Positions 12,815 to 63,262 are shown, counted from the stretch's first letter. The stretch: 64,000 bases of DNA from Kudoa neothunni (GCA_964304625.1 OZ199838.1:3622440-3686439); one strand, 5' to 3'. Notes: generated from the letters alone by a model not told the origin. Numbers and translations: made by a program.

Positions 12815-15800
12815 ATGAATAGTGACCATTCAGTGTCATCGAATATGTTGAATGTTGTGAAATCGGAACCAAAAACTTCAATATCAAAAATTTCAAAGTT
12901 TGAGATGGTTCTCAACACCGAAGAGTCTATAAAAGTGTTCAAGGAGTTATGTCAATTGTTGGATATTAGTGAGCAGTTGGTTGCATTATCTATCAAAGAT
13001 TATAACGCGGTGAAGTCATGTTTTATTCTACAGGTACATGGCAATCATAATGCAATTAATCTACTGAGAAATGATGCTAAAGGATTTCATAAATTTTAGG
13101 GAGATCAAAAATTGTGGCTAATATGTGCCTTGTATGGGCTTGTTTTATCGATATCGAATAGTGGCGTGTCAGCTGCAGCGTTTGCGAAAAATAACAACAA
13201 CAACAGCAGCAGCAGCGCAACAAATCAACCAGCACCGAACAACTATCTAATGATGGATATACCGATCCATAATCGTAAACCAAACGTACCAAATTACACC
13301 AATTCATCATGCACTATCAACGCTTCTACCGCTATTGGCGGTAATGTTTCTGGGTCAAATGACAAAGGGTCGTATCAACAGAATGTTTCTAATTCTATCA
13401 GCAGCAACAATCCACCAATATCAATCGTTTCACAGTTGTCGGACAATAGCGAAAGTGTTTCATTGCTGAGTAGATTGCTTCGTCTTATAAAAGTAAATGT
13501 GAATTTCTTTTTTTCCAAATTCAACAACTGGATGCGAATGATCGATCTACCGAAACACGTAACCCAGTTGATATCATCAGTGGAAATGTCGGAAGGTGTT
13601 TCGTGTGTTTTGTTTCAAAAATATGTGCAACTGTTCAATCTATTTTTCCGAACTCCTGATGAATACGCGTTAATCGATTTGAAAAGCAACAAGCGCAAAA
13701 CCAGAAAGCGATCGTGTGATGCAAATGAATTGTTTCATTTTTGTTGGATGCTATTTGTTGCCACAAAAGAGTTGATATCTGTTGTGTACGATGTGTCCAG
13801 TGGGTTCCATTTGTTGTTACATAGCATTCGATTCGCCTTTATGAACGTGATCCACGAGAGTGATCTCTCATCAAAGTTGCTTTTACCCTCGTTCACCGAG
13901 GATGATGAACAATTCAATGTGGTGAGAAATTATTCGGTGGAAGAGTTGGAAGGATTTTTCTATGATGTGCTGACTGCTAATAGTGTTCGTTTTGTGAGGG
14001 AGGAAGCCGAGAATAGTTATCATCGTATATTTGTCCCAGCACTTGAATTTATTCAACAACAACATCATTTTGTGTTCAATTTGATATCAATGAAATCCGC
14101 TCTCGAACCCGAACACATTACATCCAATCTGTATTCTATTTTTTAATTTGTTGTTGTTGTGTGTATTGATGGAAAATGTTATTTAGAAAATATCTCATTG
14201 AATTTTATCGAGACTATCGTGTTCTCCATTTTGGTATTGATGAAATGGAATACGTGAAATTGCTCTACAATAAATCTATGTTTGTTCCGTTGGTTATGAG
14301 CCAACAAACAGCTACCACTACTAATTCTTGTGGTCTTCCTTGTGAGTCGTCAATTGCAACATCCGACCTATTCTTTCGTTCCAACAGCAACAACAACAAC
14401 AATAACAACCACAACAATGACGGTTCATTAGGCTCCTCTCAGATTGATTCGTTGAAGGTAGTTTTTGTCATGTCTAATTTTTATTTTAAAATCGATTGTA
14501 GGATTCCGCTCTCAAACAGGAATGTCATCCCACCACTAACACTCATCAGGACGAATTGTCGTTGTAAGATTGTGTGTGTACGTGTTTACGCTTTGTTAAT
14601 TTTCACTCAATTAATAGATCGTTGTCACCCGAAAACTATGTCATAAATCTCATGAGTTTATTAAAGAAACTAGTCTACAACAACGATGGTTCCAACTATA
14701 AGAATTTGTTGGAAAATTTGCTAGAGTAATAATTACACATTTGTTACCAACCAATTACATACAATATACTTTTATCTAATGTGATTAACTCGTTTAGGAC
14801 TAATTCTTTCAATGTCGCCTTACGTAAAGCAACATCACTCCCCGAATCGGCTCTTGATATCTTCCAAAAAGCCATAAATGATGAAAACTCACAACACAAT
14901 GTTGAATCTTGGGATATCTGCGTTGATATGTATTATAAAGTATGTGTTTATCATTACAATATTAGTTAGTGTGATATTAATATGTGTTCTTGTTGTTTCT
15001 TTTGTAGATGTTGTATTCTACTGTTGAGAACGAAATTTCCAAAAGCCCAAACACCGACAATATTCAACATGTTATGGTAACTTTTGTGTTCAAGTTTTTA
15101 TGGATTGTGTTAATTACAATGGGTCGATTTAGTCCTTTATTTCGTCACATGACTTCCATAAATCACTTCTCACCGTATGTTTTGATATCTTCATCTTTGT
15201 GAACAATATCCAAAAGTACTACTACCACTGCTATTTTGTTCGTGTCCATTGTTTATTGTTAGAGGTTGTTGGCGTGTTTAATGTTCAGTTAATTATTGAT
15301 TACGTGTGGTTAAAATTTTACTAATTGTTTTCACTTAATGAACAATATGGTGTCTATGGGTTTTTTGTTTTAATAATTGCTTTTATTTTTTTACTTAATT
15401 GTGGTTGAAATTAAGTCACGTGCACATGAACGTATGCATGTATTATATACAGTAGGCAACCGGTAATAAACACCAAAGCTGCGTGCGCGTGTTATTTTAT
15501 TTCGCGTTTTATCTATTTTTCAGAATAAGTATTATATCGTTTATTTAAAAAGAATGACAAAACATTATTACGATTGTTTGGCCGAAAAATAATTTGCAAT
15601 TTTTATTGTTATCTTATTTATGGATAAAATATTTATATCCTTTTACATTGGGATAAAATCCAGTGAATGGTCAGTTCAGTATAATTATAAACACTATTTT
15701 ACGCCTTATTCACTTTTTAGCGCAATATAAAAAAAATTTTTACGTTTAAATCGTGTAATCCTTTTTTATCTGCACCTATAACATTGTTTTGAAATTAAAT

Positions 15801-18800: not shown

Positions 18801-21378
18801 CGACTAATATCCGACTAATAAGGAATAAAAAACCTTAAATTCAACAATAATGATTTTCACACTCTTATGCGGATATTTGAATATTTCATCAAATAAAAGT
18901 GTTTGCTGAATATTACAGGTTGTTTAAAAATTATTGTCGTGACAAATTAATATGTCTTTCTTTATTATTTATATCCTTAAGTTATTATATTGCTGTGTAT
19001 AATTTAATATTCTATAAAGCTTCTCACGCTGTTTATTTTGAATTCCTTTGTTGTATTTAACATGAAAGGTTTCAATTGTTTTAATATTAATCATGGAATA
19101 TCTTGTATTTAATTAAATTGGATTTATAACGCCAACAACCGCTTAAATATTACGAGTTGATCTTGAATTATGTTTGAATAGACCCTTTCCATGGATATGC
19201 AAATTATTTGATATTGAACCCTTTTATCTAACTCAGGTGATTACCGCCCATTTTTGCTAACCTTGAATTTGACGTTGTATTTATTGAAATAAAGTGCATT
19301 GAATTGGTGATCAAATATGAACCCAAACTTCCACGTGCAGTTGCAAAACATCTCACAATAGTATGGAATTTTAGTTGGAGTTGGTTAATATGTTGTTGTA
19401 GCTTGAAGAAGATATCGTTAGTTGCCATGGTTGGGCTCCCACTTCACCTATATACGCACGTCTTGACTCCCAAATTAACGCTGCGAACGAAATTCCATCT
19501 GCCACTTCGTATACCGAAGATCATTTGAATTCGTTTCTGCCGTTTTTTTGTAATGTAAGAATTGAGGGAGTGTTGGACTATGATGAGACACTTGTCAACA
19601 TAAGCGAACCCCTCTTTGACAAATCCGAATTGTTGAATGGTATGATTTTTTTATAATAAATATATGACGTTCCAGTTTGGATCGAGTTTTTGGTACAATC
19701 ATATTATAAAACTCTCTGATGAACTGGTATATTATTGGCTGAACCTATTGATTTTTTCGAGTTCACATGAATTATTCCTTTCATGTTGAATCGTGGTGAT
19801 ATTGATAGTAGCGCCTACATTATCTATCAAAAAATTATACTTTTTTGTGTGTTATCATAATTTTTGTTTAGTGGGTGGTTATCATGAACAAAATTTTATG
19901 TCCAACAAGTTTTGTGGTGTTGAAGTGTGCTACTATGTGAAACCATCATCCAATAAAGTGATTTCGTCAACTGTATCTATTTTCTACCAAAAAGTAGTTG
20001 TTATTTATTCTTCAGTTTAATCAACTAGTACTTGTTTTAGGTATATCATATTGTACTAACGAGATTAAATGATTTTGGGATAAAATTAAAATTGTCCAGA
20101 GGTGAAAAAGCACTGTAATAAGTTTGATCTATTGTACATGAACGAAATTTAAATTCATTTAGCATATGGAAGTGTATGGAATACATGCTAGTCTTCCATA
20201 CATATTTGATGAAAGATCATCATCTTGACCAACTACTCATCTGTTCCATTTACACCGTTATGAAAGTAGTGAACCGTCCTGTTAGTTTTGAAAGAATTCT
20301 ACAACATTATGAGAGTCAACCTCAAGCCAAGTTGTCATTATCGAGACAGGTTTCGTCGTCCATTATCAACACATTACTACACAACAGTTCGTTGTCGATA
20401 AATTTCAGTGTTTCGCTTGAGAATAACTCCATCAAAGCATTTATTAGTGCACCAAATGCTCGATCGCTGGGCACCGTGGTTGGTAATGTGGCTGGAAATA
20501 ACTCCAATATTGTTAATGCCAGTGAAAATAATCCCTCAAATCCTGATTTCAACTCTGTAAAAACTTTTGTTCCGGTTGGAGCTTCTATTACATATGTTGT
20601 GAGTGATGAGACTCGAAATCGTTTATTGGAATTTTTCACTTCAAGACAATTGTCGGCCATGGGTGATGAAATTTGCGATATTATCCAATTCTACAACAAG
20701 GTTACACTTAGATTCTTCTCACATTCGCGTGATATATATATTCTTCCTTAGATATTCTCTCACATTGTTCAACGTTTTGCAAATGAGATGGCACAATTCT
20801 TTATTGTGAGGAATTGTATTTGGAAAATTAGATATTTATGTGGTTATTTAGCAAAAAAGGATTGTAGTCGAACCCTACCCTGTACTTAAAACTAACTCAC
20901 TTGTGTCCCCACTTAGGATCTCTTCTAACTATGCTGTGTTTGTTTCTCCTATGAAACTCACTAATGTGTCTAGTGGTCATTACAATCCCGACCAACCACC
21001 TACTCCTTTCTTCAACAATAAATTCAGACATCACAACCTTGGAAATAGTAGTATCCGGTTCAATCTGGCTAGCGACAAAAGTCCCCTGGTATGTACGTAC
21101 CGATCGATTATTTTTCTTTTATGAATTTTGTAATATATTAGCTTTGTTGTAATTTTAAATCTTTACTAAAATGTCGTTTATATTTTGTTGGCATGACTGT
21201 TGTTATGTAGGTCTGCCGAGAAATCAACCGATTTGTTTCTGAGACTAAACGCGATGCCGATTTTACCTCGTTCCCCTCTTCATCTAATCCTGTGAGACGT
21301 CGGCTAATGATCGATGAGGAAGAAACTCGGAAAGTCCCAAAAATTTCTGGAGTTACCAACACTGAAGCCATTAAATAA
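12815..21378 (+). CDS. RBL1: Retinoblastoma-family pocket protein (p107/p130-like), multi-exon
   Basis: N domain WLICALY, FFSKFNNWMRMIDLP, ELFHFCWMLFVATK; pocket A FHKSLL..KPFPW..LPRAVAKHL; pocket B LMKDHHLDQLLICSIY..K, DIIQFYN; C-terminal SPLRIS..VFVSP. Large intron 15216-19181. RBL1 vs RBL2 not resolvable. Confidence 0.9.
15450..16089. mobile_element. Tc1/mariner-type MITE in the Rb-like gene's large intron
   Basis: TA-CAGTAGGCAACCGGTAATA at left; TATTATCAGTTGCTTACT..ACTG-TA at right. Confidence 0.6.
17845..18760 (-). mobile_element. Non-autonomous Helitron in the Rb-like gene's large intron
   Basis: Minus strand begins A|TCTATCTACCTATAAATATATAAAG..GTGTGTCTGTC and ends with a degenerate hairpin CCCAGTAAACGCCAGG then CTAG|T (A|TC...CTAG|T Helitron signature). 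Confidence 0.65.
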
Positions 21379-41854: not shown

Positions 41855-44800
41855 ATGTTTCATAAAATATTAATTCTAGCTATATTTGGAGTGGTTTTTC
41901 CAAATCTGCACACTTGTGTTAGAGCGGAACGCGAATCACATCCTCCAAATGTTCACGTAATATGGATATTGCTTGCATTGTGTGACTCTAACAAAATTTA
42001 GTATTTTGTGAATATTGTCTTGGAACTATACACGAGTTGTATTCGCGTCTATGAGGTTATTATTAGAGGGGAATATGATTATACTATCGAACTAATAAAC
42101 ACAGTTGACCGTAAGATTGATGAGATTAATGATGAGATGAGTTTAATTTTTGTAGTTCCTGAATATTTTATTACAGTCAAGTATTCCACCGATGAGTTTG
42201 AAAATACTCTTGTTGAAAAACTTTGGGAAGCACTAAAGAGGGCAAATATCCGTACATACGCTGAGAATGTTCAGTTCAATGTAGTTCAAACAAACACCTT
42301 ATTAATGACGTACTAATAATTTATTCTGTCGGCTTTTTTCTATTCCAAAATAGTGAAGATATAAACCAACATTATTACGATGCATTTAACAGGATTAATC
42401 AGAGAGAGCGATATTACGGGAGCAATAAGGATGAACTATTTACACATATGATAAATATCAACACATTTAATAGAGCGGATAAAGCGTGGGCACTTTATTA
42501 TTTGGCCTACGTAAAAAAACTAGTATGTGCTTTGATGAGTCGTGAAAATGATTTTATTGTTCTTAGATCAAATGGAATGACTTTCTTCTATATATTGACG
42601 ATAATTCTTTCGCTGTTTCCTTAGTAAATATGTCATATAGTTTGCCACATTCTGAGTATGCTCTCAAACGAAATGTAAACTTCATTGTCGGTTTTGATAC
42701 CTATTACCGAGGAATTGAAATATTAAAAAATCGAATATTCAACTACCTCAAAGTATTCAGTTTTTTTGTTTTATTACTAAGTTTGATGTCACGAATGGAC
42801 AACCAGAATGTAACAACGAATGGTAAAATCGTCACCCCATGCTACCCTAATAAAGAATATAAACTGGATGATCCAACCACTTTGACTGTGGTCTGTTCGG
42901 GATGTGCCATTACAAAAGAAAAACAAGACAGCTTAAAAGGTTACACACTTACTGGAGAATTCAATTATGAAAAATGCGCAAATATACTGGAAAATCGTGC
43001 CTTTCAATACAGTCTCCCGGTCCTTAAAGAAAGGAGCCTAAATTATGAATGGAGAAATTTTATTTCGTTATTCGAATATCATCGTCAGAAAGTGAGATTA
43101 TTAATTTAATTGAATAAATAAATAAAATATGTGTACACGATTTGATCTTAATATGAACATGTATAGTTGGTTATAGTTCAGCCGGGACAAAATGCACTGG
43201 GTAGTCATGTAAGAACAGATAACGTGAAACATTTGTACAAATATGTGGAAAAAGAATGTATAAATCTATCGGAAGTATTTGCCACCAACATAATTTAATC
43301 TTTCATTAAATAACTTTAGGATTCAAGTCCAAGCGCTTGCTTCAATGCGTTTTATACCTACTATATTTACAATAATAAAATACCTGCAAAGTCTTCCTTT
43401 AAAGTGAGATTTGACATTTTTCTGTACTGACGAGTTTGATTCCTAATTCAATTGCACCACATAATAAAACTAAATTTTCGAATATTGAATCAATTCCCCA
43501 AAATATCCTTAATATTATATTTAAATCTAACTTGTAACTAAAATAAATTTGGGATATGTTATAAATTACAATGCCACATTTTATTTTTATATTTTTTCCA
43601 AAAACCATTCTTAAGTGTGAAAAATATATTAAAATAAAATTTTAAAGTTGCTGAATAAAAAACCGGTCAATAATCACTCCATTATTTAAATAAAAATTAG
43701 CGATAATTTTTCTATTTAACCCTCCAAACATTTTTGGGGCCCAAATGGACCCCACGCACACTTTAATCTCAATTCACTGCTCACTGAAAACTTTAAAATG
43801 GCGATATCCAATCATTATTCTTTAAAAGTTTCTATATATACATAATTTAATTTAAAAATTTGTAATTTTTTGTTTTCTAGGATTTTATATCAAATACTTA
43901 CAACAAGCAGTTTTGGGATCCAGGAGGACCCCACGTTTTTATTTCTCAAAAACTTTTATAAAATTATAAAAAATAAAATACTCTAATTTCGTAAGGTTAT
44001 ATCCATTAAATATTGAGAAAAATCAAGGTTTCTGTTTCCGAAGCGTAACGAGCGAAACCGGTTGCCACCGGTCGTTAGGAATGGAAGAGTTATGTGATGG
44101 TTTTCTAACAATTTACGACTCTGATTGCAGTGAAATGGAAGATATTATTGAAGAATGTTTCTCTTCATCTACTTATAATAGTTCAAATAATTATTACATC
44201 ACAAAAATTATTTGTTATGGTCTTTAGTTGTGCTTTCAAATACAAAAATCAAGAAAGAAAACATCTTAAACAAACCTCTAGGTCTAGCTGCATTTGTAAC
44301 ATCCCGAATTTACGATTTATATGATAGTTTTACCATTTTTTTGATGATGAATTTTTCAATTTTGCCATTACTCACACTAATAAGTTTAGTGCTTTTCTTT
44401 ACGGATGCAACTAGAAAATTTAAATATAATGGAATTTAAACCATTCATAGGAATTCTTAAATATACTCCAATCTTTAAATCTAAAATGGAGTCTCTTAAG
44501 TAATTGCGGAGCTTGAATAAAGGACATCGTATACTTCGTAGAGTCATGTCGCTTTATAGATTCATCCAAGTAAACAGAAATATTCACTTTGATGATTGTG
44601 AGACAAGGGTTTGCGATGAGAAGTCGATAAGTTTTTCCCGGTGACCGAGATTTTCAACAGGTTGAAAAATATTTTGCCGATGTGTCTAATTCCTCTGCTC
44701 ATCTTGCTGTTGATGAACAATTAGTTTCATTGAGAGGCGGGTGACCCATTACGCAGTATATTCCCACCAAACTTGCGTTTTATGTCATTAAATTTTTTTC

Positions 44801-46479
44801 TTTTAACTGATCCTCATCATACCAATAATACACGTAACATCTTAGTTTATCTTTGAGGGAACAATGACCAGATTATCAAATGTGTTGGTGAAAAGGCCAG
44901 TAAAAACTTTTGTTGCGATAATTTTTACAATTCGGTTCCATTGGCAAACAAAATTCTTAACCTAGTTTTAATCATTCTGGAGACAATCCAAAATAATAAT
45001 GGGGATATCTCATTACTTTTTAAAGTTAGGGAATAGGTGTTTTTTGGTTCAATTTTCCTAAAAAGGACGTGGTCATTTTATTGGCGACGCCCCCAAACAA
45101 TGTTAATTTATGCCGTGATCAGACAAAAAATCCGCAAGTTATCGTCGATTATAACAAAACTAAGGTTATGCGGATACATTAGTTAGTATTCCGCCTACGA
45201 TAAAGAGAGGTATATTTTCTGCGCTCGGTTCTCTGATATAATAATAATAATGAACAAATGTTATTGTTGCTCCAAACATCGCTGCAACAATCATTTGAGA
45301 ATTATTTATTACAGATGGAAACAGAAAATAACCAGTAAAATTTATTTAATTACATATTATATTTTTAATTATTATTTTTGAGACTTTTTAGCATAGTTAA
45401 GAAATATATTAATTATTAATCCATATTTTATTATAAGTGATTGGCCTCTATGTGAGTTCGCAACGGTGGATATACCAAATTTTTTATGAATATCAGTTAG
45501 GTAATATTGTATTTTATGTCATCTTAAAAAATGTTATTAAATAATTATAAGAGTCGGTAAAATCAGAATCATTTTGTTACAAGTGAACGTAGGTATTTTC
45601 AGATGTTATTAGAATTTTGAAAGGTCCACTATCTTGTTAGTATCTAGAAAATGCTGTGAAAATATCATATAATATATTAAAATATAATTTCATTAATATT
45701 TAAACTCGTAGAATTAGTAAATAAGTCTTCGTAACTCATCGACTATAATTGCCACGCAAGTAAATTGTGATTATTTCGTTATTGCTCGAGTAAAAAACTT
45801 GTTAAAAGACTATAATTATAATTCATAATATTATGTATCAAAATAAGTAATAAAAATCTGGGGTCCTCCTGTACCCCAAAACTGCTTGATGTATAGTCGT
45901 TTTTGGCATGATTGGAGGTTTAAATAATCGTCTTTATTGATGAATAATTTATATTATAGTACAATATTGTATTAATGTTATTGTTTGTGATTTTGTAATG
46001 TTATTTTTTTATATAAAGAACCCTTTGGTTTCTCTATACAAGGTAGGTCTTTTCGGCATTTTTTTACTAAAAAATATTTTAAGAATGCTGAATTACATTG
46101 GGACGAATTTATCATATACGATAAACTTGGTTATAAATTAAACCAAACTCTTATTCGTACACCAGTCCTTCCTACTGCAGAATATAGATGTTTCTACAAT
46201 TTGGGTCCTTGCAATTATGATTCTAATAAGGATAAAGAAATGGATAAAAATAAGGATAAAGATGATAAAGATATGGCGTTAATAATATTCATAGAGTAAG
46301 TGAACAATTTTTTTACATATATAAATTTTTTTAGATATTTAAAATTTTTGTGGAAATATCTTTTAGCAGCGATCCCGGCTTCACTTCTTATTTGGGGAGG
46401 TATTCAACTTTACTTCAAGTGTAAAAGAAAATCCAATGTGAAAAAGGTTAGTGATAGTCAAACAAAGATTGATGAATGA
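41855..46479 (+). CDS. CD39/GDA1 (E-NTPDase)-fold membrane protein, paralog A, with degenerate apyrase motifs
   Basis: Hydrophobic N terminus; YFVNIVLELYTSCIRVY (ACR1 position); TPCYP; TGEFNYEKC; KEC..ACFNAFYTY; KLGYKLNQT (CD39 TLGYMLNLT); C-terminal TM and basic tail; 9 predicted exons, intron 7 = 43404-46083. Confidence 0.75.
43720..45919 (+). mobile_element. Decayed piggyBac transposon in intron 7 of NTPDase-like paralog A
   Basis: TTAA|CCCTCCAA...TTGGAGGT|TTAA; internal inverted repeats at ~43901-43933 and ~45858-45891; transposase relics LAVDEQLVSLRG..QYIPTK, CDNFYNSVPLA, VIVDYNKTK with stops and frameshifts. Confidence 0.9.
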
Positions 46480-47087
46480 ATGCTAATACCTAATATTCAT
46501 GCTTACCTTAACAAAATTTACAAACTATTATCACGTTTTCGATGGAATATTTGTCCTTATGAATAAAGCAAATGTAAAAATATTACAATGAATGCAATTT
46601 AATAATCAATAAGTTGTTTCATGCGGCTATAATCATTTACCTATCATGAAAATTTTAAGTATGTGATCTCTCACTTAATCGGCTTCTACGACCCAATAAT
46701 AATAATAATAATAATGGTAATAATTCTTACGATGAATAACTTAATGATAATACCGGAGACAGCCATCCTTGAGCATAATCGTAATACAACCTTCGAGACC
46801 GCGTTATGATATGATGCTAAGAAAATTTTTATGGATACGTAATGTACTTTTTGTTCAATACAAAAACTCGATTTTTCGACATCCTCTCAACTAATTTTAA
46901 TTTCACAATTTTTAAATATTTTTTGTATTATCATTTAACGGTATTACTCGCGATATATCATTCCCTTAATGAAATTAAAATTTATGTCAATTATGACCAG
47001 GTATTGCAGTTTTCGATTAAAATCGTCGAATTTTTTAAAAAGTTTCTGTTTATTTTGGCGCAGGCGCACTTGTTTTTTATCCGAGTC

Positions 47088-48990
47088 TGATGGGCAGAAA
47101 TAGAAGAGATATTTGTAGTTACGCCCTTGAATGGGAATATTTGAGGTGTCAGACGGTGATTTAATTTGCAATTATTGCAAGATAAAACTATTTCCACAAC
47201 AAAATCGATGTCAAGAACAATTTAATTCAAAAAAGCATAACTCTGAAATCTGCGTTTGAAAAGGCCTCCACTCTTCCAAACATATTCTTTAGGAGTATTG
47301 AAAATGGTGATTCGGAAATAGATTTGGTATCTGTTGTCGCATTTGATGGACTCCCGCTTTCGTCAATTGACAAAAAAGTTCTTTGCCACAATTTTTATCG
47401 AAATATTGTTGGTCATCTCGTACTTCACCATACGCTCGTTCACTGATACATAAATACTTACCTATTTTGTTCGAACGTTATATGTTTGCATTGAAAAATA
47501 CTTTAAAGGCTCGACGCTTTCCATTGATCATTGATGAGTCGCCCGACTCTAAAAATAGACCTTTGTTTAACATTTTGCTATGTTACTTTGATATAGAGAA
47601 CAATACAAAAAGAATCATCATTCTTGATTCAAAAGCCTTAAGCGAACGCAACACAGTTATAATTACGAGCGAAGTTGCGGAATTACTCCAAAAACACGAT
47701 ATTAAATTAATTGGAAAAATTGTATGGTTATCGTATCCTATTCGGCATCATACATGAAAAAATATTACAAGAGCATAGCTCTAATGTATAATCTTATTGT
47801 TCGAGTTGCTTACTTTTCACATTTGATTCATTCTGCAATGGTCAAACAATTGATTTGATCTTCATTAACATAAAACGATTTTGTATGAAGTTTTCATCTC
47901 TTATTGCTAAGAACAGATAGACTAAAACCAAATTCCTACACTTTCTTCAGAAAAATGATTCAGAATACACAAAATCAGTTCCAGGCGTGCTTGATATAAG
48001 ATGTTACAGTTTGTATAATTGCGTGCTAACTTTTCAAGAATATTTTCTAACAATAAAACAATTTATTGTAGAATCTAAACATAGTTCTGTTCCTAGATTT
48101 ACCACCTTGTTTGATCTGTCTGTAACGTCGTTGGGTGAAATGTCAATTTATCTAAAACTTATTATCAAGTTTCTCTCTCCATTATATGAATTTTAAATTA
48201 CAAACCGAATCTAATGATTCTATTGGTATCTCGAGTCTCTCCGACTGGACAAACTCAAACTACAATATATCTTTAACAACGCTATTAAACAGCAGTAATC
48301 TTACCTCTTTCTTTTTACCAAAGAGAGAAAGTTATCCAAAAAATTACCGGATTTCATGAATTACTCTTCTATCAGCTCAAGAATTCAATCAATAAACTAA
48401 TTGAGGGATGCGTTCTATCGATTGGTTTTTTAGATAAAATAGAGAACTTAGATTTTTCTCTGAAGGGATGCGTTAGAGATGTGAATCCGAGAGATATTCA
48501 ATTGTTTGTTCCTAGTGACAAAAGAGGAGACCAATTTCAGAATGAATGATTGTGATTATCACAGGGTAATATAAATACGGTCATTGTAGAATCTTGGAAA
48601 AACATACATCACAATATCCAGTATCTCATCTCTCGCACAAGATTTGTTATCAACCTCCATATTGTGCATATCTGTCGAAAGTAGCTTTTCGTAGATAAAA
48701 CATATGTTTACCCTCGGCCGAACATACTGATTGAAAGGTGCAAGATTCTTTCAATTCTTTATTACAACGTGTAAGCTCACCTGAATCATCGCCAAAACTA
48801 GACATTGAGCAAACAATAAAACCAATACTAATTACACAACAATAACTAATGGGAACTAAGTGTTTAGATGTAGCCCTAAGAGAATGTTAGATGGGTAGAG
48901 ATGATGTCACACAATTCAGAATTAGATAAGTAATAGCATATTATGCTTATAAATATGCATAAATGGGTTTACATAATTTCCGAGGCACGG
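47088..48990 (+). mobile_element. Decayed hAT transposase pseudogene (non-Buster subgroup)
   Basis: LICNYCK zinc finger, LIIDESPD, SASYMKK, SHLIH, IRCYSLY (RW-like position), VESSFS..KH; many stops; probable terminus near 48990; boundaries approximate. Confidence 0.8.
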
Positions 48991-49084
48991 ATAAATTATT
49001 ACTCACCTAACAGTGGTACACTGTAAAAAAATATACAAATTGAAAGAGAAAGGGGGAATATTACAATATCGAATATTTTAAATC

Positions 49085-50030
49085 TTTGTGAAATCCAGGT
49101 AAGTACTTTAGGGGTGAAAAATTCTGCTTTTATGACCCTGGCCCGAATGATATTCAACGCATTGTAATTTTAACAACAAAAGAACATTGAACGTTTAAAT
49201 AATTCAACGGTAATGGTAGCAGATGGAACTTTTGATATCGTCCTAAAGAGTTTTTACAGCTCGGTACCCTTAATGAAAGCATCTTAGACAAATTTTTCCC
49301 TCTGCTTTTTGTTTTAATGAAAAGCAAAAATCCAGAATTTTGTATTAATTAATCAAGTTAATATATAAATGCCACATAATATAATTATGGATTTTGAATA
49401 TGCATCTTTTGATGCTTTTAAAGAAGCATAAAAATTTTCAACTATCTAATTTTGCACTTTTCGTTTAAGACAGTATGTTTTGAGGAAATTACAAAAGTTT
49501 GGTATGAAAACAATTTACAAAAATAATGTGGAATTTAGACTTCTAATCAAATCTTTTACTTTGTTGGAATTCGTTCCTGAGGAAAATTCTTTAGAAGAGT
49601 ATGAAAAATCGAAGATAGAATCTAGGAAAGTAAATTAAATATCATTAACTCCATTTCTAGATTATTTCGAAAACAATTTCCTATATGGACGCAAGTATCC
49701 TTAACGGCTTGGAACTCGTACAAAAGAGTAATGGAAAATCTATCATTAACCTCGAACAATACGGAAAACTTTCACAAATGTTTTAAAGCATTATTCGAAC
49801 AATCGCATTCAGGACTGAATAATTTTGTAGAAAAGCTGCAACAATGTCAAAACGTCAACGAACAAGAAATATAATTTCCAATAGATAATCCATTTAATGG
49901 TTCCACTACGAATAAAAATCATGACAAAACGAATAAAATAAGAGTGGCCTGCGAAAATTATAAGCGCTACACTACGGATTATTTTATATTAAAACATTGG
50001 CCAAACTGTATAATTGGTGTATAGATTAGA
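49085..50030 (+). mobile_element. Decayed MULE/Mutator transposase
   Basis: VADGTFDIV, FPLLFVLM, IMDFEYA, FLDYFENNF, WNSYKR..TSNNTENFH (typical TNNxxEGWH position); stops and frameshifts. Confidence 0.85.
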
Positions 50031-50329
50031 ATAGTTATTTTATGTAATTATGTTAGTTTGCAATAAATAATTGGTTTTTCTATGTTATTCAAACCTATCA
50101 TAACATGGTCAACAGGGAACGTTGGGCGAAATTTCGCCTCACTAAAGCATGCCAGAAAAAATCAAAATCTTGAGCTTCAATGGAGTCAAATGATCGAAGA
50201 TATAGTGTAGGGTGGGGGTTTGATTTTGGATACACGCTAACTCTCAATAAAAAATGTGTGTTTGTATTATTTATTTTCGAACGAGATTCTTTTTGTGGCA
50301 CTATATAAATAACTATAAAGAAAACAAGT

Positions 50330-50900
50330 TTTGTTATACATGTATAGTATCTGTTCTCATCCCAGGGTACAGACAGACTCTTTAGGCACGTAAATGGCTA
50401 ATGAGTTTGTCAATTTTCTATTATTAAGTGGGGATATAATAAATTTAAAAATGCGCCCCGGTTCATTGGGCTTATGTGTCCCGAAACACCTCAAGAGTGT
50501 TCCCGATGGTCTGTATATATTGAAATCAATAAGACCCTACAACTCAGGGGATAGTTTTTGCGACAGGAATTCTTGGTCGTTCGAATTTTTGAAATAAATT
50601 TCCTTCCCTCTCTTCGGCGAGGCCTAACAAAAAGATAGTACCAACATTTTGTCACATTCTTGTTTGGTTTCGTGCACAGATGGTATTTTAATATTGTGAC
50701 ATTAGAGCTGCTGGCCTCCGTAACGTTTTCCAGCTCTTCTACTAATAGTTTTATTTTTTTCCAAACATCAATCTTCTGAAATATCCCCATACTTCTTTAC
50801 GCTTAGATCAAAGTCTATGAAAAGAGTTTGTGGTGAGTCCCCTTTTTATATATTCGAACACACCTCTGTTGTCAGAGATGAGCCCTCCAATATCAAAGGG
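50330..50900 (-). mobile_element. Possible Penelope-like retroelement RT relic
   Basis: Across frames: KRGL, CTKPNKN (cf. ITKPDKGN), IYRPSG..THKPNEPGR (cf. PKIHKPxxPGRPI); heavily decayed. Confidence 0.4.
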
Positions 50901-51096
50901 GCTCTCTGCAGCTAACCACCTCCAGTAAGTACAGTCAACAAACGGTTATTGCACATTTTTTTGGAGAATCGTAAAGAAGTACGCAATACCCATCTAATAA
51001 CGCGTGTATGAAATCAAACAATTATCTTCATTAAAACAAACTACTTAACATTTATTTAAATTTAAATTCCAACAAAAAATTTTCATACGTATTCCT

Positions 51097-51138
51097 GTTG
51101 CGAATCCCCGGTTGAAAACTACTGCATTAGAGGGTTAA
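51097..51138. mobile_element. Buster TIR end followed by a piggyBac-like terminus
   Basis: GGTTGAAAACTACTG + cattagag + gg + TTAA; same junction layout as 39062-39089. Confidence 0.5.
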
Positions 51139-52190
51139 GATAACGAAATTGTATTAATCTCATACACATTAATATATAGGGTTGATGTTAAATATCGAAA
51201 TCTCTTTGCAATCATTATATTGGGTCTAGTTAATAATGCTTATTTCCATAATGTATTAAATAATTAGAAATTAACGTATATATTACTTATTATCTCTATA
51301 ATATTGGGTTTGGCAATGGAAGATCATCCCCGAATCGTTACAGTAATTTTTTTATTATTTACTAATACACAATTAATGTACAAATAAATGTTATTAATTA
51401 AAATAAATATTAAATTTTTGGGATTAACGAATAAATTCAATTGGTTAAAATGCGGAATAGTGGTCAAATTTTCAGATTACAGATTATAATTAGTTTGATT
51501 ATTAATCCTATATTTTTAATCCCAAATTAGCGTTATAATTATGCTAATATTTTTTCCAGGAATGACTTATCTTCACTCAATATATTATTTTTGATATTAT
51601 GGTTACGCATTTGCTACAATTGAACACCTAATGCTTGTATAAAATACGAATTCTTTTTTCTTATAGACAGATTTAACAATAGGCAATCGCTAAGGATGAA
51701 ATATGGCAATTCAACAAAATTAAAGTTGTCCAACTTAAACTCTACAACATAATGCATGCTTTATTTGAGCCAAATTAATTAGTGGTATAGCCTGTCGAAA
51801 GAATCGCGAAGACTAGGAGTTCTCTGCATTAATAGATTACTGCAAGTGCTATTGTGATGACAAATAGGGGTTGCTAAAAGTACCGTACTGATGAGTGACC
51901 CAACATTGATTAATACTCAATAAAATATTCAGCGGGTTCGTTTTTGTACGTTGTCGCTAATTTGGATAACGACCACTATGATACATTCCTACCATCAATT
52001 ATAATAGAAACTAAAATATGATTAGCTTAATAAAACAATTCATTTATTTTTATTAGCAATATAAACAAGATTATTAACATATTATGTGAAAAAATCCTAT
52101 TAATATTATAGTAAGCTCTATACTTGGCGGAGATAACAGATTGATAATAGCATTAATTTGTCGTCTTAACTAGAAACTGTTCAATTCCAC

Positions 52191-54158
52191 ATGTTTCTAT
52201 TATACCTTTTTCCGATTATAATTGGGTTAGTTCTAACGGACGATTTGTACAGGGTTAGCCAATTGCGAGATACTCCAACCCAAAATATCTATGTACTAGC
52301 TTGTTGGTTGTACAAAATATAAATTAGGCATACAGTACTATGTGAATGTGGTTTTGGAGATTTTTAAAAGCTGTATACGTATGTATAAAGTGAATATCAT
52401 TGGAGACCATAATTATACTATCGAACTAATGGATACAATTTACCGTAATATGTTTAGGTGTAGATATGTTGAGGCTAAAAATTATAAATTTGTAGTCCCT
52501 GACTATTTCGTCACAGTAAAGTACTCCAAAGGCAAATTTAAGACTATCTTGGAAGAAAATATCTTACAAATTCTCCAAAACAATGATATCAAGACAATTG
52601 GTGACTATGTTAGAATCAATGTACTCCAAACAGAGACGTCCATAATGAGGTTTTAAAAATGGTTCTGTTAATTATTTTCTAATTGATTAAAAGCGAAATT
52701 ATAAGCAAAAATTATTCCGAAGCGCTTCTTGAAATGAATTCCACTCAACCATTTATAGATAAAATAAGAATTATAACTCTTAAGTCAGTCGACAAAGCTT
52801 GGGCTTATTACATAGTGACGTTCGAAGAAAATGAAGTAGGTGCCTTTAAAAAGTTATCTGTAATTTTTAATTTTATTAAGTCAAAATGGAATGACTTTCT
52901 TGTCTATGTCGATGAAAATTCATTTGTGATTGGACTGCCCAATTTATCGTATGGGTTTGCACATTCTAACTATGCACTAAACCTCAATGTAACGTATATC
53001 GTTGGGACGAATTTTGAGTGTTATGGAATCAATATGCTAAAACATCGAATGTTCCGTTTGTTAATGGTGTCTTGGTATTATTTATTTTTATTTTTAATGT
53101 TTTAAAGGAAAAGCAATTTGAATCCCCAAGTGAAATCGTCCATCACCCGTGTTATCCTAATGTTACATTTGAGTTGGATAAGGAAGATGCATTAAAACAA
53201 GTTTGCCCTCTATGTTACATAGAAGGGCGTAATAACAAAGTCCTAAACAATTACAAAGTTGTGGGGGAATTAAATATAAGAAAATGCATGGCTTTAATTA
53301 TCAAGGCTTCTAATCATTTTTTTGAGGAAACCCCGTTGGATAATTGTGGTTATTACAGTTGGTTAAGTTTTATGGAAACCTTCAAAAATTCTAACCAGAG
53401 TGTATGACGATTTTTTAGTTACTAACTGGTCAAATATCCATAATCCCATTTTTAAATCAGCATTCTTTAGTTGGTTTTTGCTCAACCGGGACATAATACC
53501 TTAAATACAAATGGTTACGTAAAAATTAAAAATATTCTTCGTAGCAACATCAAAAAAGAATGCAATATGTCACTGAATGTATTCCTTGTTTATTATTCTA
53601 TATGTAATATCTAATAACATATTCAGGGTACAGATTTTGACGTCTGCTTTTCTGCAATCTATACCTATTTCATATTCAAATATAAAATCGGGACTGATTT
53701 ATATTATAAGGTTAGATTTATGAATATTTCGTTGTTTAGTTTAGTTAGAATTTTGAAATATTATGGGACAAGTTTCTTATATACGATGACTTTGGGCTAG
53801 AATTGAACCAAACTCTTATTCATAATCCTGGGCTTCACTCAACCATATACAGTTATATCAGTAAAATATACGAAGAAGAGCTTAATAAATCCAAAGTAAT
53901 AATAATTCCCGAATTTCCTGATGTATTGCATATTCCGTCACGATATGTACAGTCGTCATTCATTTTGGAGTAAGAAAATTAATTTTTAAAAGATTTTAAT
54001 TTACCTATAGGGGGATAAGAGACTTATGGAAACCCCTTTTAGCACTCTTCATGATTTTTCTTTTATATCTTTTAGTTGTTTCTTGTAAGAGATATAGAAA
54101 TGAAAACAAAGATTATCTTGAGGTTGGCAGTGGGAGTTTGCAAGAGATCAACGATTGA
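52191..54158 (+). CDS. CD39/GDA1 (E-NTPDase)-fold membrane protein, paralog B, with degenerate apyrase motifs
   Basis: Colinear with paralog A and same exon layout; IRIIT (CD39 ARIIT), NFECYG (SFLCYG), HHPCYP (DPCF), VVGELNIRKC (IQGIGNYQQC), KKEC, VCFSAIY (YCFSGTY); C-terminal TM LLALFMIFLLYLLVVSC. Confidence 0.8.
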
Positions 54159-60912: not shown

Positions 60913-63262
60913 ATGGATGAAAATAAATTTATCCGCGGAATAGCTCCCATGGAGTTTGCAATGAATAGATCACTCGAACTTTACAACCTAGTTCAAGTAT
61001 TTTGGAGATATAACAATGTCTCGTTATATAGTTGAATTTAGCGTCTAAAACGCACATGTTCTTCAAGATTAGCCATTCAAAGATTACCATGTCATTTGAG
61101 ACGACGAAGTTCCAGTTATAAATCTCATAAGTTGCCTCTTCGTAGAGTCGGGAAAGCTTTTAGTCATGGAGGTTACAACGTGGTTGCCAAGGTAACCATA
61201 TTTATTGATTTTTCTTCTGCGAAATAATTTCTATGTTAAGCGACGAAAAAAGTCTCGTATAGTTCAACTATATGGAAAAAGACGTCGTAGATATTGTCGA
61301 ATGAAGTATTTTAAAAAAACGTTGCTGTCTCGATCGAAAACCACGAAAAAGCAAACCTTTTTGAATAGCGGCAAGTTTCTACCATTAACGACTCATCTGT
61401 TTTACGCGAAGCGTTTTCGAATGGTTAAATATACCAATTGGATTTATAGTTTGCCATTCGGTTGTATGTTCAAAACATACAGACCTTCATGCCGCGCACT
61501 TTTAGGATATAGCGTTTTGATAGTAAGCTACACTTAAACAAGTGCTTAATTGATTATTTTTTCCTTTTAAGGATATGAGCTACTTGACGCAGTTTCAGAT
61601 ATGTTCTAATAACAGTGATATTATCAAATTTTTTAAAACCTACACAGATGATAGAATTGGAAGTGATATTGAAAGTAAGATATGTGCTGATGGGCTGTGT
61701 GAAGGGGAGAACAATTCTTTATGCAAATGTAAATAATGAAGATACTAGCCGAGCAGTTGCAGGTCCTATCAAATATAGCGTTTCGATTAGAAGTGAGGAA
61801 ACCAAAATTGTGGATTTGGTGTCATCCTTGCTGCACCAAATCAGTTGACAATCTATTAAATGAATACTACTCCGCAAACCCTTACTACAGTTATGAGTTG
61901 TTATCAGTTCAGCATAAATTCAATCGGTATCGATTGATAGGTCCTCAGTCGTTGGAGATACTTTTTGACACTCTTCTCGCTTGTACTTTGCAGAAGTCGA
62001 CCCAAATTATTAAAGATGAGGATTTGTTAGCAGGTCAGCTTTGGAATAGTCGAAAAACCGATGGTCGATTGGTGTATAATCTGCTAGTGCAGTTGTCACT
62101 TGTTAAAAAACCCAAAACCAACCATCAAAAAGTATCTCTCACCTTCAAAAAAACCACTAATCAAAACATGACATCGGCCAATCCCCGTAGTGATATGATT
62201 ACCTTTCATTCAAAATTCAAAGGCATTATCACTATCAACGATCAAAAATACATTCCTGTTAGTGTGGTGTTGAATCACCGGTTTGATCGGTTGCAGAATC
62301 ATGTGGATATTGTGGTGAGAGATTCGATAGGTGGCAGGCGTTTGTGGAACGCGCTGCTAAATAGGAATGTATGTGTTGGTGGTTTGCGTGAATTACAAAC
62401 CTATTTCTATAATTATCATCAGCCTTTATTTCCTTACGATTATCCTGATTGTGTTGATTATCGTCAATCCACATTCGATTACTATGTCACTGAATGTATG
62501 AAGTTGAAAAAGAATCAGCGAATGCCACCTCGAAGACGCATCAACTTTACCAATCTGCGCCAAATAGAACACGAATCACTTTTGTTCTGTAATAAAAAAT
62601 GGGTTGACGAATGGAAAGCTGCAACAATCGAATATTTAGAAGATTGTTTTCTATCTATTCCTACTCAACTACCTTCAACTTTGGAATTAGATATTCAGAA
62701 TGATAATTCAACATTAAAGGTTTGTAGAAATGGTTTTCTTTTGAATAGTTTGGCCGAATATTTCTCCGGGGTAAGTGATAGTACCGTTACCCTGTGTGCG
62801 ATTAACGAATATACGAGTGAGTGTGATAGTGCTTCAACATTAGTTTTTGTCAATTTTGATCATGTTAACCTTCGAGGCTGCCCCCAATCGTTGGCCACTA
62901 TCCACCTGCCCACTTTCCCGGTTTTATCCAGAGAAATTAAGGAAAGTGACTGTTTGGATAAAAATTTTAGAAAATATGATTGCTATACTAAAAACCGATT
63001 TTCAATCGATATGAATTGGCCTTTTATTATCATTGGTCAATGTACTGCTGGAAGTTATTCGTATCGATTTGGATATCCTACTGCTCAAGGTTTTATCTCG
63101 TTGAAAGCATTGCATTTAATTATTCAACTGGAATTAACTAAAACCAAAGTTGGTGGTGCACCCGATAGAAACTACAGAAATACAGTCCTTTTACGAAATC
63201 GCGGTTCAGATCGTTATTTACGTTCCTACTTCTCTATACCATTGCCTAGTTACCAACTGTGA
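60913..63262 (+). CDS. POP1: RNase P/MRP protein subunit POP1, 4 predicted exons
   Basis: QRLPCHLRRR, LTTHLFYAKRFRM, DMSY, LWIWCHP, NRYRLIGP, GGLRE, FPYDYPDC, PPRRRINF, IIGQCTAGSYS..AQGFIS and VLLRN, all POP1 motifs in order. Confidence 0.93.

What the first reader, a model, noticed from the sequence alone, without database searches (positions are those of the whole stretch)
41855..54158. Tandem CD39/NTPDase-fold surface proteins with all catalytic motifs erased: candidate pseudo-enzyme family
Seen: two open, identically spliced paralogs with a hydrophobic N terminus, a Cys-containing ectodomain, a C-terminal TM and a short tail. They track CD39 landmarks in order (IVL..S...Y, RIIT, F.CYG, PC, G..N...C, KK.C, CFS..Y, LGY.LN.T). 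Yet ACR1 DAGSS becomes ELYTS/EIFKS, ACR2 ATAGMR becomes QTNTLLM/QTETSIM, ACR3 GQEEG becomes RADKA/SVDKA, ACR4 DLGGAS becomes YIDDNS/YVDENS, and the ACR5 Trp becomes Asp. These motifs are required for NTP hydrolysis in E-NTPDases. Inference: a non-catalytic, fast-diverging family reusing the NTPDase scaffold as a surface antigen, receptor, adhesin or decoy. Intact frames despite strong A/B divergence argue for maintained function.
Basis: partly seen in the sequence, partly recalled or inferred. Interest (0 to 1): 0.88.

Follow-up and report, generated by a model that had tools for sequence, protein, structure and literature searches.

The report
Disarmed CD39-type membrane protein gene pair
Two neighbouring nine-exon genes of a small-genome animal parasite (earlier scan notes name the fish parasite Kudoa neothunni) descend from the cell-surface ATP-destroying enzyme CD39/NTPDase but have lost its catalytic motifs. 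They belong to a family of at least 21 such genes that the papers searched do not describe.

Summary
Gene A (41855-46479, 528 aa) and gene B (52191-54158, 532 aa) are open nine-exon paralogues. They share the same splice layout, a hydrophobic N terminus and a C-terminal membrane span, and are 39% identical.

Direct searches do not see an NTPDase. Pfam, HMMER against PDB sequences, hhalign and the ESM Atlas all failed exon by exon. Three indirect lines support descent from one:
- A 19-member exon-5 profile that includes A and B has rat NTPDase1 as its best PDB sequence hit (E 0.034, matching region). It also matches exon 5 of the genome's own intact NTPDases (hhalign 88.6%, E 2.7e-6).
- Exon 7 matches its counterpart (P 0.0004).
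- Six introns of A and B have the same phases as in those NTPDase genes, and three of A's six lie at the identical coding coordinate.

With exon borders as anchors, the Gly-rich phosphate loops, the catalytic Glu and the ACR5 Trp are replaced.

Not shown: the full-length fold (the joined protein was not searched or folded), expression (no parasite RNA reads) and surface location.

The scan had already found this family elsewhere in this genome. A and B are a divergent branch without the stalk seen in members that carry one, and a relative exists in another sample. Interest is moderate to good.

The parts
41855..41956 (+). gene A exon 1: start codon and hydrophobic N terminus (signal peptide or anchor)
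42002..42309 (+). gene A exon 2: from the ACR1 position (IVLELYTSCIR) to the ACR2 position (QTNTLLM); ends in phase 2
42354..42510 (+). gene A exon 3: ACR3 position (RADKAWALYY)
42567..42752 (+). gene A exon 4: ACR4 position (YIDDNSF)
42807..43091 (+). gene A exon 5: PCYP ... C ... G..N...C module, the part with a significant match to NTPDases
43167..43274 (+). gene A exon 6 (..VEKEC..)
43320..43403 (+). gene A exon 7 (ACFNAFYTYY), matches exon 7 of the true NTPDases
43713..44078 (.). dispersed repeat of about 365 nt inside A's intron 7 (at least 40 copies in the genome, 72-92% identical)
44090..44439 (+). decayed duplicate of A's exons 8-9 inside intron 7 (E8-like stretch plus a hydrophobic tail); not the gene's real 3' end
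46084..46295 (+). gene A exon 8: ACR5 position (DKLGYKLNQT, Trp replaced by Asp)
46335..46479 (+). gene A exon 9: membrane span, short basic tail, stop codon
47047..51894 (.). spacer between A and B, largely three dispersed repeat families (about 47047-48777, 49024-50142, 51439-51894)
52191..52292 (+). gene B exon 1: start codon and hydrophobic N terminus
52336..52649 (+). gene B exon 2: from the ACR1 position (VVLEIFKSCIR) to the ACR2 position (QTETSIM); ends in phase 2
52694..52835 (+). gene B exon 3: ACR3 position (SVDKAWAYY)
52881..53066 (+). gene B exon 4: ACR4 position (YVDENSF)
53108..53401 (+). gene B exon 5: PCYP ... C ... G..N...C module
53471..53578 (+). gene B exon 6 (..IKKEC..)
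53627..53710 (+). gene B exon 7 (VCFSAIYTYF)
53749..53969 (+). gene B exon 8: ACR5 position (DDFGLELNQT). A further small in-frame intron inside this exon cannot be excluded without RNA
54011..54158 (+). gene B exon 9: membrane span, short basic tail, stop codon

Best explanation
A and B are old tandem duplicates within a lineage-specific expansion of at least 21 loci. The expansion comes from a cell-surface-type NTPDase (GDA1/CD39) gene of the kind this genome still keeps intact twice (loci L003 and L016).

Shown here:
- the gene models and the family size
- homology of exons 5 and 7 to the true enzyme genes
- a shared intron layout with those genes
- the same end-to-end architecture: a hydrophobic N terminus, an ectodomain of about 480 aa with conserved cysteines, and a C-terminal membrane span
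- replacement of the residues that do the chemistry

The replacements are as follows. In the two phosphate-binding loops, ACR1 DxGSTGTR becomes E[LI][YF][TK]SCIR and ACR4 DIGGSS becomes Y[IV]D[DE]NS, so the glycines give way to bulky or acidic residues. ACR2 loses its glycines. The ACR5 Trp becomes Asp.

Inferred:
- The proteins keep the two-lobed NTPDase shape but cannot hydrolyse nucleotides the canonical way.
- They are inserted with the large domain facing outwards, or into the secretory lumen.
- They act as non-catalytic binding or coat modules at the parasite-host interface. Rapid sequence turnover (39% identity between neighbours) would reflect diversification rather than decay.

My odds are about 0.8 for 'NTPDase-derived and catalytically disarmed' and about 0.4 for 'surface binding/coat role'.
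For: Gene models are open with identical phases.

Family:
- An exon-5 profile finds 21 loci on three contigs.
- A/B exon 5 against the other members (19 rows, with locus L026, a duplicate of L025, counted once) gives hhalign 99%, P 7.8e-18.

Link to NTPDase:
- The 19-member exon-5 profile against all PDB sequences has rat NTPDase1 (3zx0/3zx3) as best hit, E 0.034, residues 250-322, which is the matching region.
- The same profile against exon 5 of L003/L016 gives hhalign 88.6%, E 2.7e-6 over 67 columns.
- Plain HMMER gives E 8.7e-6 among 1,775 ORFs.
- Against a 9-protein NTPDase alignment the match has P 0.01 and falls on the matching columns 248-306.
- With A, B and the few closest relatives (one contig from another sample and family locus L006), the two best cells of a 7x8 exon-by-exon matrix are the matching pairs. 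Exon 5-exon 5 scores 21.1 (P 0.003, 73 columns in register) and exon 7-exon 7 scores 17.4 (P 0.0004). None of 150 column shuffles reaches either score.

L003 and L016 are true GDA1_CD39 genes. PF01150 scores 26.5 bits on an L016 read-through piece and E 7e-4 on the L003 ACR1 exon, and their ACR1, ACR4 and ACR5 motifs are intact.

Intron positions, in nt from the first base of the ACR1 exon:
- A: 308/465/651/936/1044/1128
- B: 314/456/642/936/1044/1128
- L003: 281/447/651/936/1035/1128
- L016: 287/450/654/942/1041/1134
- Phases are 2,0,0,0,0,0 in all four.

Long-term retention: a contig from another sample (L014, protein P0010) carries the end of exon 2 and exons 3 to 6 of a relative. On the exon-5 tree it is sister to B inside an A+B clade with support 95/86.
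Against: - No direct profile or fold search recognises A or B as NTPDase. This covers Pfam exon by exon, exon profiles against PDB sequences, hhalign of A/B exon profiles against real NTPDases, a 1.84-billion-protein HMMER search and Atlas features.
- Exons 2, 3, 6 and 8 give no significant match to their counterparts, so ACR1-ACR4 are placed by exon borders and motif spacing, not by a significant alignment.
- The PDB hit is borderline (E 0.034).
- The AlphaFold model of exon 5 alone (pLDDT 76) gave no significant structural match. NTPDase1 chains rank 2, 4, 6 and 16 but at E 4-8.
- There is no RNA evidence: the three RNA runs tried held no read of the locus and are no test.
- A's 2.7-kb intron 7 with inserted repeats could impair its splicing.
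Confidence: 0.72

Rival explanations
1. Dead-paralogue regulators. The proteins do not face the host. They pair with, or titrate, the parasite's own active NTPDases (L003, L016, L001) in the secretory pathway or membrane and tune nucleotide hydrolysis.
For: Same two-anchor architecture and descent as L003/L016. From general knowledge, cell-surface NTPDases form oligomers through their membrane spans, and inactive paralogues often regulate active ones.
Against: An expansion to at least 21 fast-diverging copies, many with Ser/Thr-rich mucin-like stalks, fits a display or coat role better than regulation of three enzymes. No interaction test was run.
Confidence: 0.12
2. One or both genes are unexpressed relics whose frames are open only because they have not yet decayed.
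For: No RNA support. A has a 2.7-kb intron 7 with a repeat insertion and a decayed copy of its own 3' exons. The spacer is full of repeats. The related contig L014 has a frameshift in exon 4, though its coverage is only 1.7x.
Against: Nine exons of 528 and 532 codons stay open at 7% stop-codon density, with all 16 splice sites intact, although the copies are only 39% identical. That much divergence without a single stop or lost splice site argues for selection. The A/B split predates the separation from the other sample's organism.
Confidence: 0.1
3. The family is not related to NTPDases; the landmarks are chance resemblances in a lineage-specific cysteine-containing membrane protein.
For: All direct searches with A/B alone are negative. 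Fragment fold searches are negative.
Against: - An unbiased PDB search with the family's exon-5 profile puts NTPDase1 first at the matching residues.
- hhalign E 2.7e-6 to the genome's own NTPDase exon 5.
- Exon 7 match P 0.0004.
- Six introns with equal phases, three at identical coordinates.
- Seven family loci open the first ectodomain exon with [YF]G.[IV][LFIM], as the true enzymes do, while only 8 of 3,554 ORFs in those loci open that way.
Confidence: 0.06
4. The proteins are still hydrolases, using a rebuilt active site or another substrate.
For: An Arg at the end of the ACR1 position and a Ser in the ACR4 position are kept. The ACR1/ACR4 register rests on exon borders, not on a significant alignment.
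Against: All four loop glycines of ACR1 and ACR4, the ACR3 Glu and the ACR5 Trp are replaced in both copies, and differently in other family members. From established NTPDase biochemistry, these residues are needed for phosphate binding and for activating the water molecule.
Confidence: 0.05

Closest known systems
Cell-surface E-NTPDases (CD39/NTPDase1, 2, 3, 8; Pfam GDA1_CD39, PF01150)
   Same: - Order and spacing of landmarks.
- Hydrophobic N terminus plus C-terminal membrane span.
- Conserved cysteines of the C-terminal lobe (PC..., ...C, G..N...C, KK.C, CF).
- The family's exon-5 profile has rat NTPDase1 as best PDB sequence hit at residues 250-322.
   Different: - No Pfam match exon by exon.
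- ACR1-ACR5 catalytic residues replaced.
- No significant similarity in the N-terminal lobe.
- At least 21 fast-diverging copies instead of a few conserved enzymes.
The genome's own intact NTPDase genes L003 (G000:C1:884130-887228, minus strand) and L016 (G000:C3:5316606-5319854, minus strand)
   Same: - Six introns with the same phases; three lie at identical coding coordinates and the rest differ by at most 27 nt.
- Exon 5 (285/288 nt against 285/294 nt) and exon 7 show significant similarity.
- Same two-anchor architecture.
   Different: - L003 and L016 keep DxGSTGTR, GTGGLR, an ACR3 Glu, DIGGSS and W.LG, and reach Pfam's threshold.
- They have one extra intron inside the ACR1-ACR2 exon and none before the C-terminal membrane span.
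The stalked members of the same family elsewhere in this genome
   Same: Exon 5 is clearly homologous (hhalign 99%). Exons 7, 2 and 4 have their best, though weak, matches to the corresponding exons. Catalytic motifs are lost as well.
   Different: A and B lack the Ser/Thr-rich repeat stalk. Outside exon 5 they are too diverged for HMMER. On the exon-5 tree they form their own clade with the other sample's P0010.
Expanded families of inactive enzyme paralogues on parasite surfaces, such as the inactive trans-sialidase-like proteins of Trypanosoma cruzi (my own knowledge, not tested here); and the truncated inactive ENTPD5/mt-PCPH (PMC3829800, found; I read only its title and the start of its abstract)
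   Same: An enzyme scaffold kept after loss of catalysis. In the parasite example it is multiplied and diversified as a surface repertoire.
   Different: Unrelated folds and organisms. mt-PCPH is a somatic frameshift product, not an evolved family. No surface or binding data exist for the proteins described here.

Membership tests
GDA1/CD39 nucleoside phosphatase family (PF01150) | Match to the Pfam profile above its gathering score | tested here: not met
   Exon by exon there is no PF01150 hit even at E 10. A six-frame PF01150 scan of the whole genome hits only L001 and the L003 ACR1 exon, nothing in the window. The joined protein was not searched because it has no reference, so full-length failure is not shown.
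GDA1/CD39 nucleoside phosphatase family (PF01150) | Five apyrase conserved regions with phosphate-loop glycines, catalytic Glu and ACR5 Trp | tested here: not met
   At the exon-anchored positions A/B read ELYTSCIR/EIFKSCIR, QTNTLLM/QTETSIM, RADKA/SVDKA, YIDDNS/YVDENS and DKLGY/DDFGL. L003/L016 read D[AV]GSTGTR, GTGGLR..E[TQ]EAE.., DIGGSS and W.LG.
GDA1/CD39 nucleoside phosphatase family (PF01150) | Common descent with bona fide members (significant sequence or profile similarity) | tested here: met
   For exons 5 and 7 only: PDB best hit NTPDase1 at E 0.034; hhalign 88.6%, E 2.7e-6 to L003/L016 exon 5; HMMER E 8.7e-6; exon 7 P 0.0004. Supported further by the shared intron layout.
GDA1/CD39 nucleoside phosphatase family (PF01150) | Two-lobed actin/hsp70-like (ASKHA) fold | tested here: inconclusive
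   Only contiguous pieces could be folded. The exon 4-intron-exon 5 read-through had pLDDT 53. Exon 5 alone had pLDDT 76. Foldseek, VIA-align and Atlas gave no significant match.
Cell-surface subgroup of E-NTPDases (NTPDase1/2/3/8 type) | N-terminal and C-terminal membrane spans flanking the ectodomain, with conserved ectodomain cysteines | tested here: met
   Read from the sequence only. A hydrophobic stretch lies within the first 16 residues, and a hydrophobic stretch of 15-19 residues followed by KCKRK / CKRYR lies in exon 9. Cysteines of the exon-5 motifs (PC, C, G..N...C) are invariant in the 19-member exon-5 alignment; KK.C (exon 6) and CF (exon 7) are shared by A, B and L003/L016. No topology predictor was run.
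Pseudoenzyme (catalytically dead paralogue under selection) | Loss of catalytic residues together with evidence of retained function (expression, constraint) | tested here: inconclusive
   Residue loss is shown. Constraint is indicated only by open frames and intact splice sites at 39% identity, and by a relative in another sample. dN/dS was not computed because synonymous sites would be saturated at this divergence. Expression was not testable.

The most novel reading that the evidence does not exclude
An intracellular muscle parasite has turned a dead ecto-ATPase scaffold into a large, rapidly diversifying surface repertoire: stalked and stalk-less forms, at least 21 genes. Members would either bind host molecules or still bind nucleotides without cleaving them, acting as a sink or sensor for host ATP danger signals. 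This would be a new class of parasite surface protein and a new use of the CD39 fold.
Probability: 0.25. Interest if true: 0.8.

Novelty: new variant of a known kind. Interest (0 to 1): 0.55.

Why it matters
NTPDases are known in parasites as active enzymes that remove host ATP and ADP. An expanded family that keeps the scaffold and discards the chemistry is not described in the papers I could search: no paper holds 'myxozoa' with 'GDA1', or 'pseudoenzyme' with 'NTPDase'.

If these proteins sit on the parasite surface, they are candidates for the poorly known host interface of myxozoans, which spoil fish muscle and cause food-borne illness. They would be obvious targets for antibodies and diagnostics.

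The case also shows that gene structure can recover homology where sequence and profile searches fail in fast-evolving genomes.

Tried and rejected
1. Pfam on 10 exon ORFs: nothing.
2. Exon profiles A1, A2, A3 and a chained exon 3-5 profile A5 against PDB sequences: no NTPDase.
3. hhalign of A5 and A2 against a 9-protein NTPDase alignment: 0.8% and 0.3%.
4. HMM of real NTPDases against all window ORFs: A/B exons not above noise. Only exon 7 of both falls on the right columns, at E 12-16.
5. HMMER of A5 against 1.84 billion proteins: one exon-5 relative (P0010), one spurious repeat protein, no NTPDase.
6. ESM Atlas by features on A's exon 4-5 read-through: no usable hit.
7. AlphaFold of that read-through: pLDDT 53, useless.
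8. AlphaFold of exon 5 with 19 sequences: pLDDT 76, but Foldseek PDB, VIA-align wide and Atlas shape search gave nothing significant.
9. Reads: the best holder X1 is unspliced DNA, probably the assembly's source. RNA runs X10-X12 under the same organism label held no read, which is no test.
11. My first 3' model of gene A (44090-44439) was rejected once the exon-8 profile found the better-conserved exons at 46084-46479.
12. Iterative HMMER could not link A/B exons other than exon 5 to the rest of the family.
13. dN/dS was not attempted: at 25-57% identity per exon, synonymous sites would be saturated.

Joined step left out: the spliced 528- and 532-residue proteins were never sent to any search, fold or family tool. 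Exons were joined only inside scripts to check frame continuity.
Full report
**What is there**

The window is AT-rich (about 30% G+C) and carries ordinary animal genes: a retinoblastoma-family gene at 13-21 kb and POP1 at 61.7 kb. It is G000:C1:3622440-3686439 of a 40-Mb, four-contig assembly. Earlier notes of this scan name the organism as the myxozoan Kudoa neothunni. I could not test that. A 2026 preprint mentions a chromosome-scale K. neothunni assembly obtained as a by-product of a host genome project.

On the + strand I built two nine-exon models, with every intron GT..AG:
- Gene A, 41855-46479, 528 codons.
- Gene B, 52191-54158, 532 codons.
- Neither has an internal stop, and all intron phases are identical.
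- Introns are 38-75 nt, except A's intron 7 (2,680 nt).

A's intron 7 holds a roughly 365-nt dispersed repeat with at least 40 genomic copies. It also holds a decayed copy of A's own last two exons at 44090-44439. I first mistook that copy for the real 3' end. The 5.7-kb spacer between A and B consists largely of three dispersed repeat families.

A and B are 39% identical, summed exon by exon, ranging from 27% to 57%. Stop codons are 7% of codons here, so each 100-codon exon has about a 7e-4 chance of being open.

**Is it an NTPDase? Direct tests say nothing**

The joined proteins were not sent to any search or fold tool. These tests were negative:
- Pfam on ten exon ORFs.
- A six-frame PF01150 scan of the genome, which found nothing in the window.
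- HMMER profiles of exons 2, 4 and 5, and of a chained exon 3-5 alignment, against all PDB sequences.
- hhalign of those profiles against nine real NTPDases.
- A profile search of 1.84 billion proteins.
- ESM Atlas features.

The homology is beyond what two sequences can show on their own.

**Indirect tests support descent from an NTPDase**

First, the genome has three genuine NTPDase genes: L001, L003 and L016. L003 and L016 keep D[AV]GSTGTR, GTGGLR, an ACR3 Glu, DIGGSS and W.LG. They reach Pfam's GDA1_CD39 threshold on a read-through piece (26.5 bits).

Second, their exon layout is that of A and B. Intron positions, counted in nt from the first base of the ACR1 exon:

| Gene | Intron positions (nt) |
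|---|---|
| A | 308/465/651/936/1044/1128 |
| B | 314/456/642/936/1044/1128 |
| L003 | 281/447/651/936/1035/1128 |
| L016 | 287/450/654/942/1041/1134 |

Phases are 2,0,0,0,0,0 in all four. The intron in front of the ACR1 strand is also phase 0 in all. Three of A's six positions are identical to L003's.

Third, I ran an exon-by-exon hhalign matrix of the pseudo copies (A, B, the other-sample contig L014 and family locus L006) against L003/L016. Its two highest cells are the matching pairs:
- Exon 5-exon 5: score 21.1, P 0.003, 73 columns in register.
- Exon 7-exon 7: score 17.4, P 0.0004.
- None of 150 column shuffles reaches either score.

Fourth, an exon-5 profile finds 21 loci in the genome. 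The resulting 19-member alignment (A9) has P-C, C, G and C invariant or nearly so. Its matches are:
- Best hit among 177,635 PDB sequences: rat NTPDase1, E 0.034, residues 250-322. This is the PCF.PGY ... PC ... G.G.Y..C stretch.
- L003/L016 exon 5 at hhalign 88.6%, E 2.7e-6, and by plain HMMER at E 8.7e-6.
- The matching columns of the nine-protein NTPDase alignment at P 0.01.

A/B exon 5 against the rest of the family gives 99%, P 7.8e-18.

Fifth, seven family loci open their first ectodomain exon with [YF]G.[IV][LFIM], exactly as L003 and L016 do. Only 8 of 3,554 ORFs in those loci open that way.

Taken together, I put descent from an L003/L016-type NTPDase at about 0.85-0.9.

**Motif status**

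With exon borders as anchors, the catalytic positions compare as follows:

| Position | A | B | True enzymes (L003/L016) |
|---|---|---|---|
| ACR1 | ELYTSCIR | EIFKSCIR | D[AV]GSTGTR |
| ACR2 | QTNTLLM | QTETSIM | GTGGLR.L |
| ACR3 | RADKA | SVDKA | stretch that holds the Glu |
| ACR4 | YIDDNS | YVDENS | DIGGSS |
| ACR5 | DKLGYKLNQT | DDFGLELNQT | W.LG.. |

The register is exact to within one or two residues. It is not backed by a significant alignment for exons 2, 3, 4 and 8. Under any register the loop glycines are absent. From established NTPDase enzymology (my knowledge), these loops bind the phosphates, the ACR3 Glu activates the water molecule, and loss of these residues abolishes activity.

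**Fold**

I could fold only contiguous pieces:
- A's exon 4-intron-exon 5 read-through gave pLDDT 53.
- Exon 5 alone, with the 19-sequence alignment, gave pLDDT 76.
- Foldseek found nothing significant. NTPDase1 chains rank 2, 4, 6 and 16 at E 4-8, which I do not count as evidence.
- VIA-align and the Atlas shape search gave nothing.

That the whole fold is kept is therefore inferred.

**Family and age**

The 21 loci lie on three contigs, some in clusters such as four copies at C3:10.34-10.37 Mb. Many carry a Ser/Thr-rich stalk before the membrane span; A and B do not. Outside exon 5, HMMER cannot link A and B to the others. hhalign gives weak best matches to the corresponding exons 2, 4 and 7.

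A 1,085-nt contig from another sample (ENA ERZ4740390, L014) carries the end of exon 2 and exons 3 to 6 of a relative. On the exon-5 tree A, B and this sequence form a clade (support 95/86), with the foreign sequence sister to B (96/74). The A/B duplication is therefore older than that split, which argues for long retention.

**Expression**

No parasite RNA was available. The only runs holding the locus are DNA, probably the assembly's source. Three RNA runs with the same organism label held no read.

**Verdict**

Its interpretation is supported for descent and for loss of the catalytic motifs. It is unproven for fold, surface role and expression.

The scan had already reported this family on other DNA of the same genome (s1-692211 and others). 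This window adds a divergent stalk-less pair, a relative in another sample, and gene-structure evidence that ties the family to two intact NTPDase genes. The papers searched describe nothing like it.

Noticed in passing
window 43713-44078: A dispersed repeat of about 365 nt (SINE- or MITE-like) sits in intron 7 of gene A. At least 40 copies at 72-92% identity lie across contigs C1-C3.
   Followed up: partly
window 44090-44439: A decayed duplicate of gene A's exons 8-9 lies directly after the repeat, inside intron 7. It has an E8-like stretch and a hydrophobic tail ending in a stop, and suggests a local rearrangement of A's 3' end.
   Followed up: partly
window 47047-48777, 49024-50142, 51439-51894: Three different dispersed repeat families (73-89% identical copies elsewhere) fill much of the A-B spacer. 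The ORF at 47383-47757 inside the first one has no Pfam match.
   Followed up: partly
L003 (G000:C1:884130-887228, -) and L016 (G000:C3:5316606-5319854, -): Two intact paralogous NTPDase genes have unusual motifs: ACR2 is GTGGLR instead of ATAGMR, and L003's ACR3 lacks the usual glycine. A third, differently spliced NTPDase is at L001 (G000:C2:7278507-7279569).
   Followed up: partly
L018 = G000:C3:2039162-2042446 and L019 = G000:C2:7348109-7351387: Two near-identical stalked family members on different contigs carry long arrays of an 11-residue Thr-rich unit (TTTLEPSTIVE-like) in front of the membrane span, a mucin-like stalk.
   Followed up: no
L025/L026 (G000:C2:11538807 and 11578192); G000:C3:10340272-10369423: An identical-scoring exon-5 pair lies 39 kb apart, suggesting a recent segmental duplication. 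A cluster of four family copies lies on both strands within 30 kb.
   Followed up: no
window 42567-42752 compared with the L003/L016 ACR1 exon: In the exon matrix, the ACR4 exon of A/B scored slightly better against the ACR1 exon of the true enzymes (14.3) than against their ACR4 exon (12.8). This might echo the internal duplication of the two lobes, or it might be noise.
   Followed up: no
window 13112-14146 and 20176-20751; 61736-63262: A retinoblastoma-family gene (DUF3452 and RB_B domains) and a POP1 (RNase P/MRP subunit) gene flank the region. Both are ordinary animal housekeeping genes.
   Followed up: partly
window 9460-10483, minus strand: Two ORFs of 110 and 149 aa have a Cys-rich N-terminal stretch that recalls domesticated transposase proteins. 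Neither has a Pfam hit.
   Followed up: no
L014 positions 335-548 (ENA ERZ4740390 contig): The related gene in the other sample has a frameshift inside exon 4. The contig has only 1.7x coverage, so this may be a sequencing error rather than a pseudogene.
   Followed up: no
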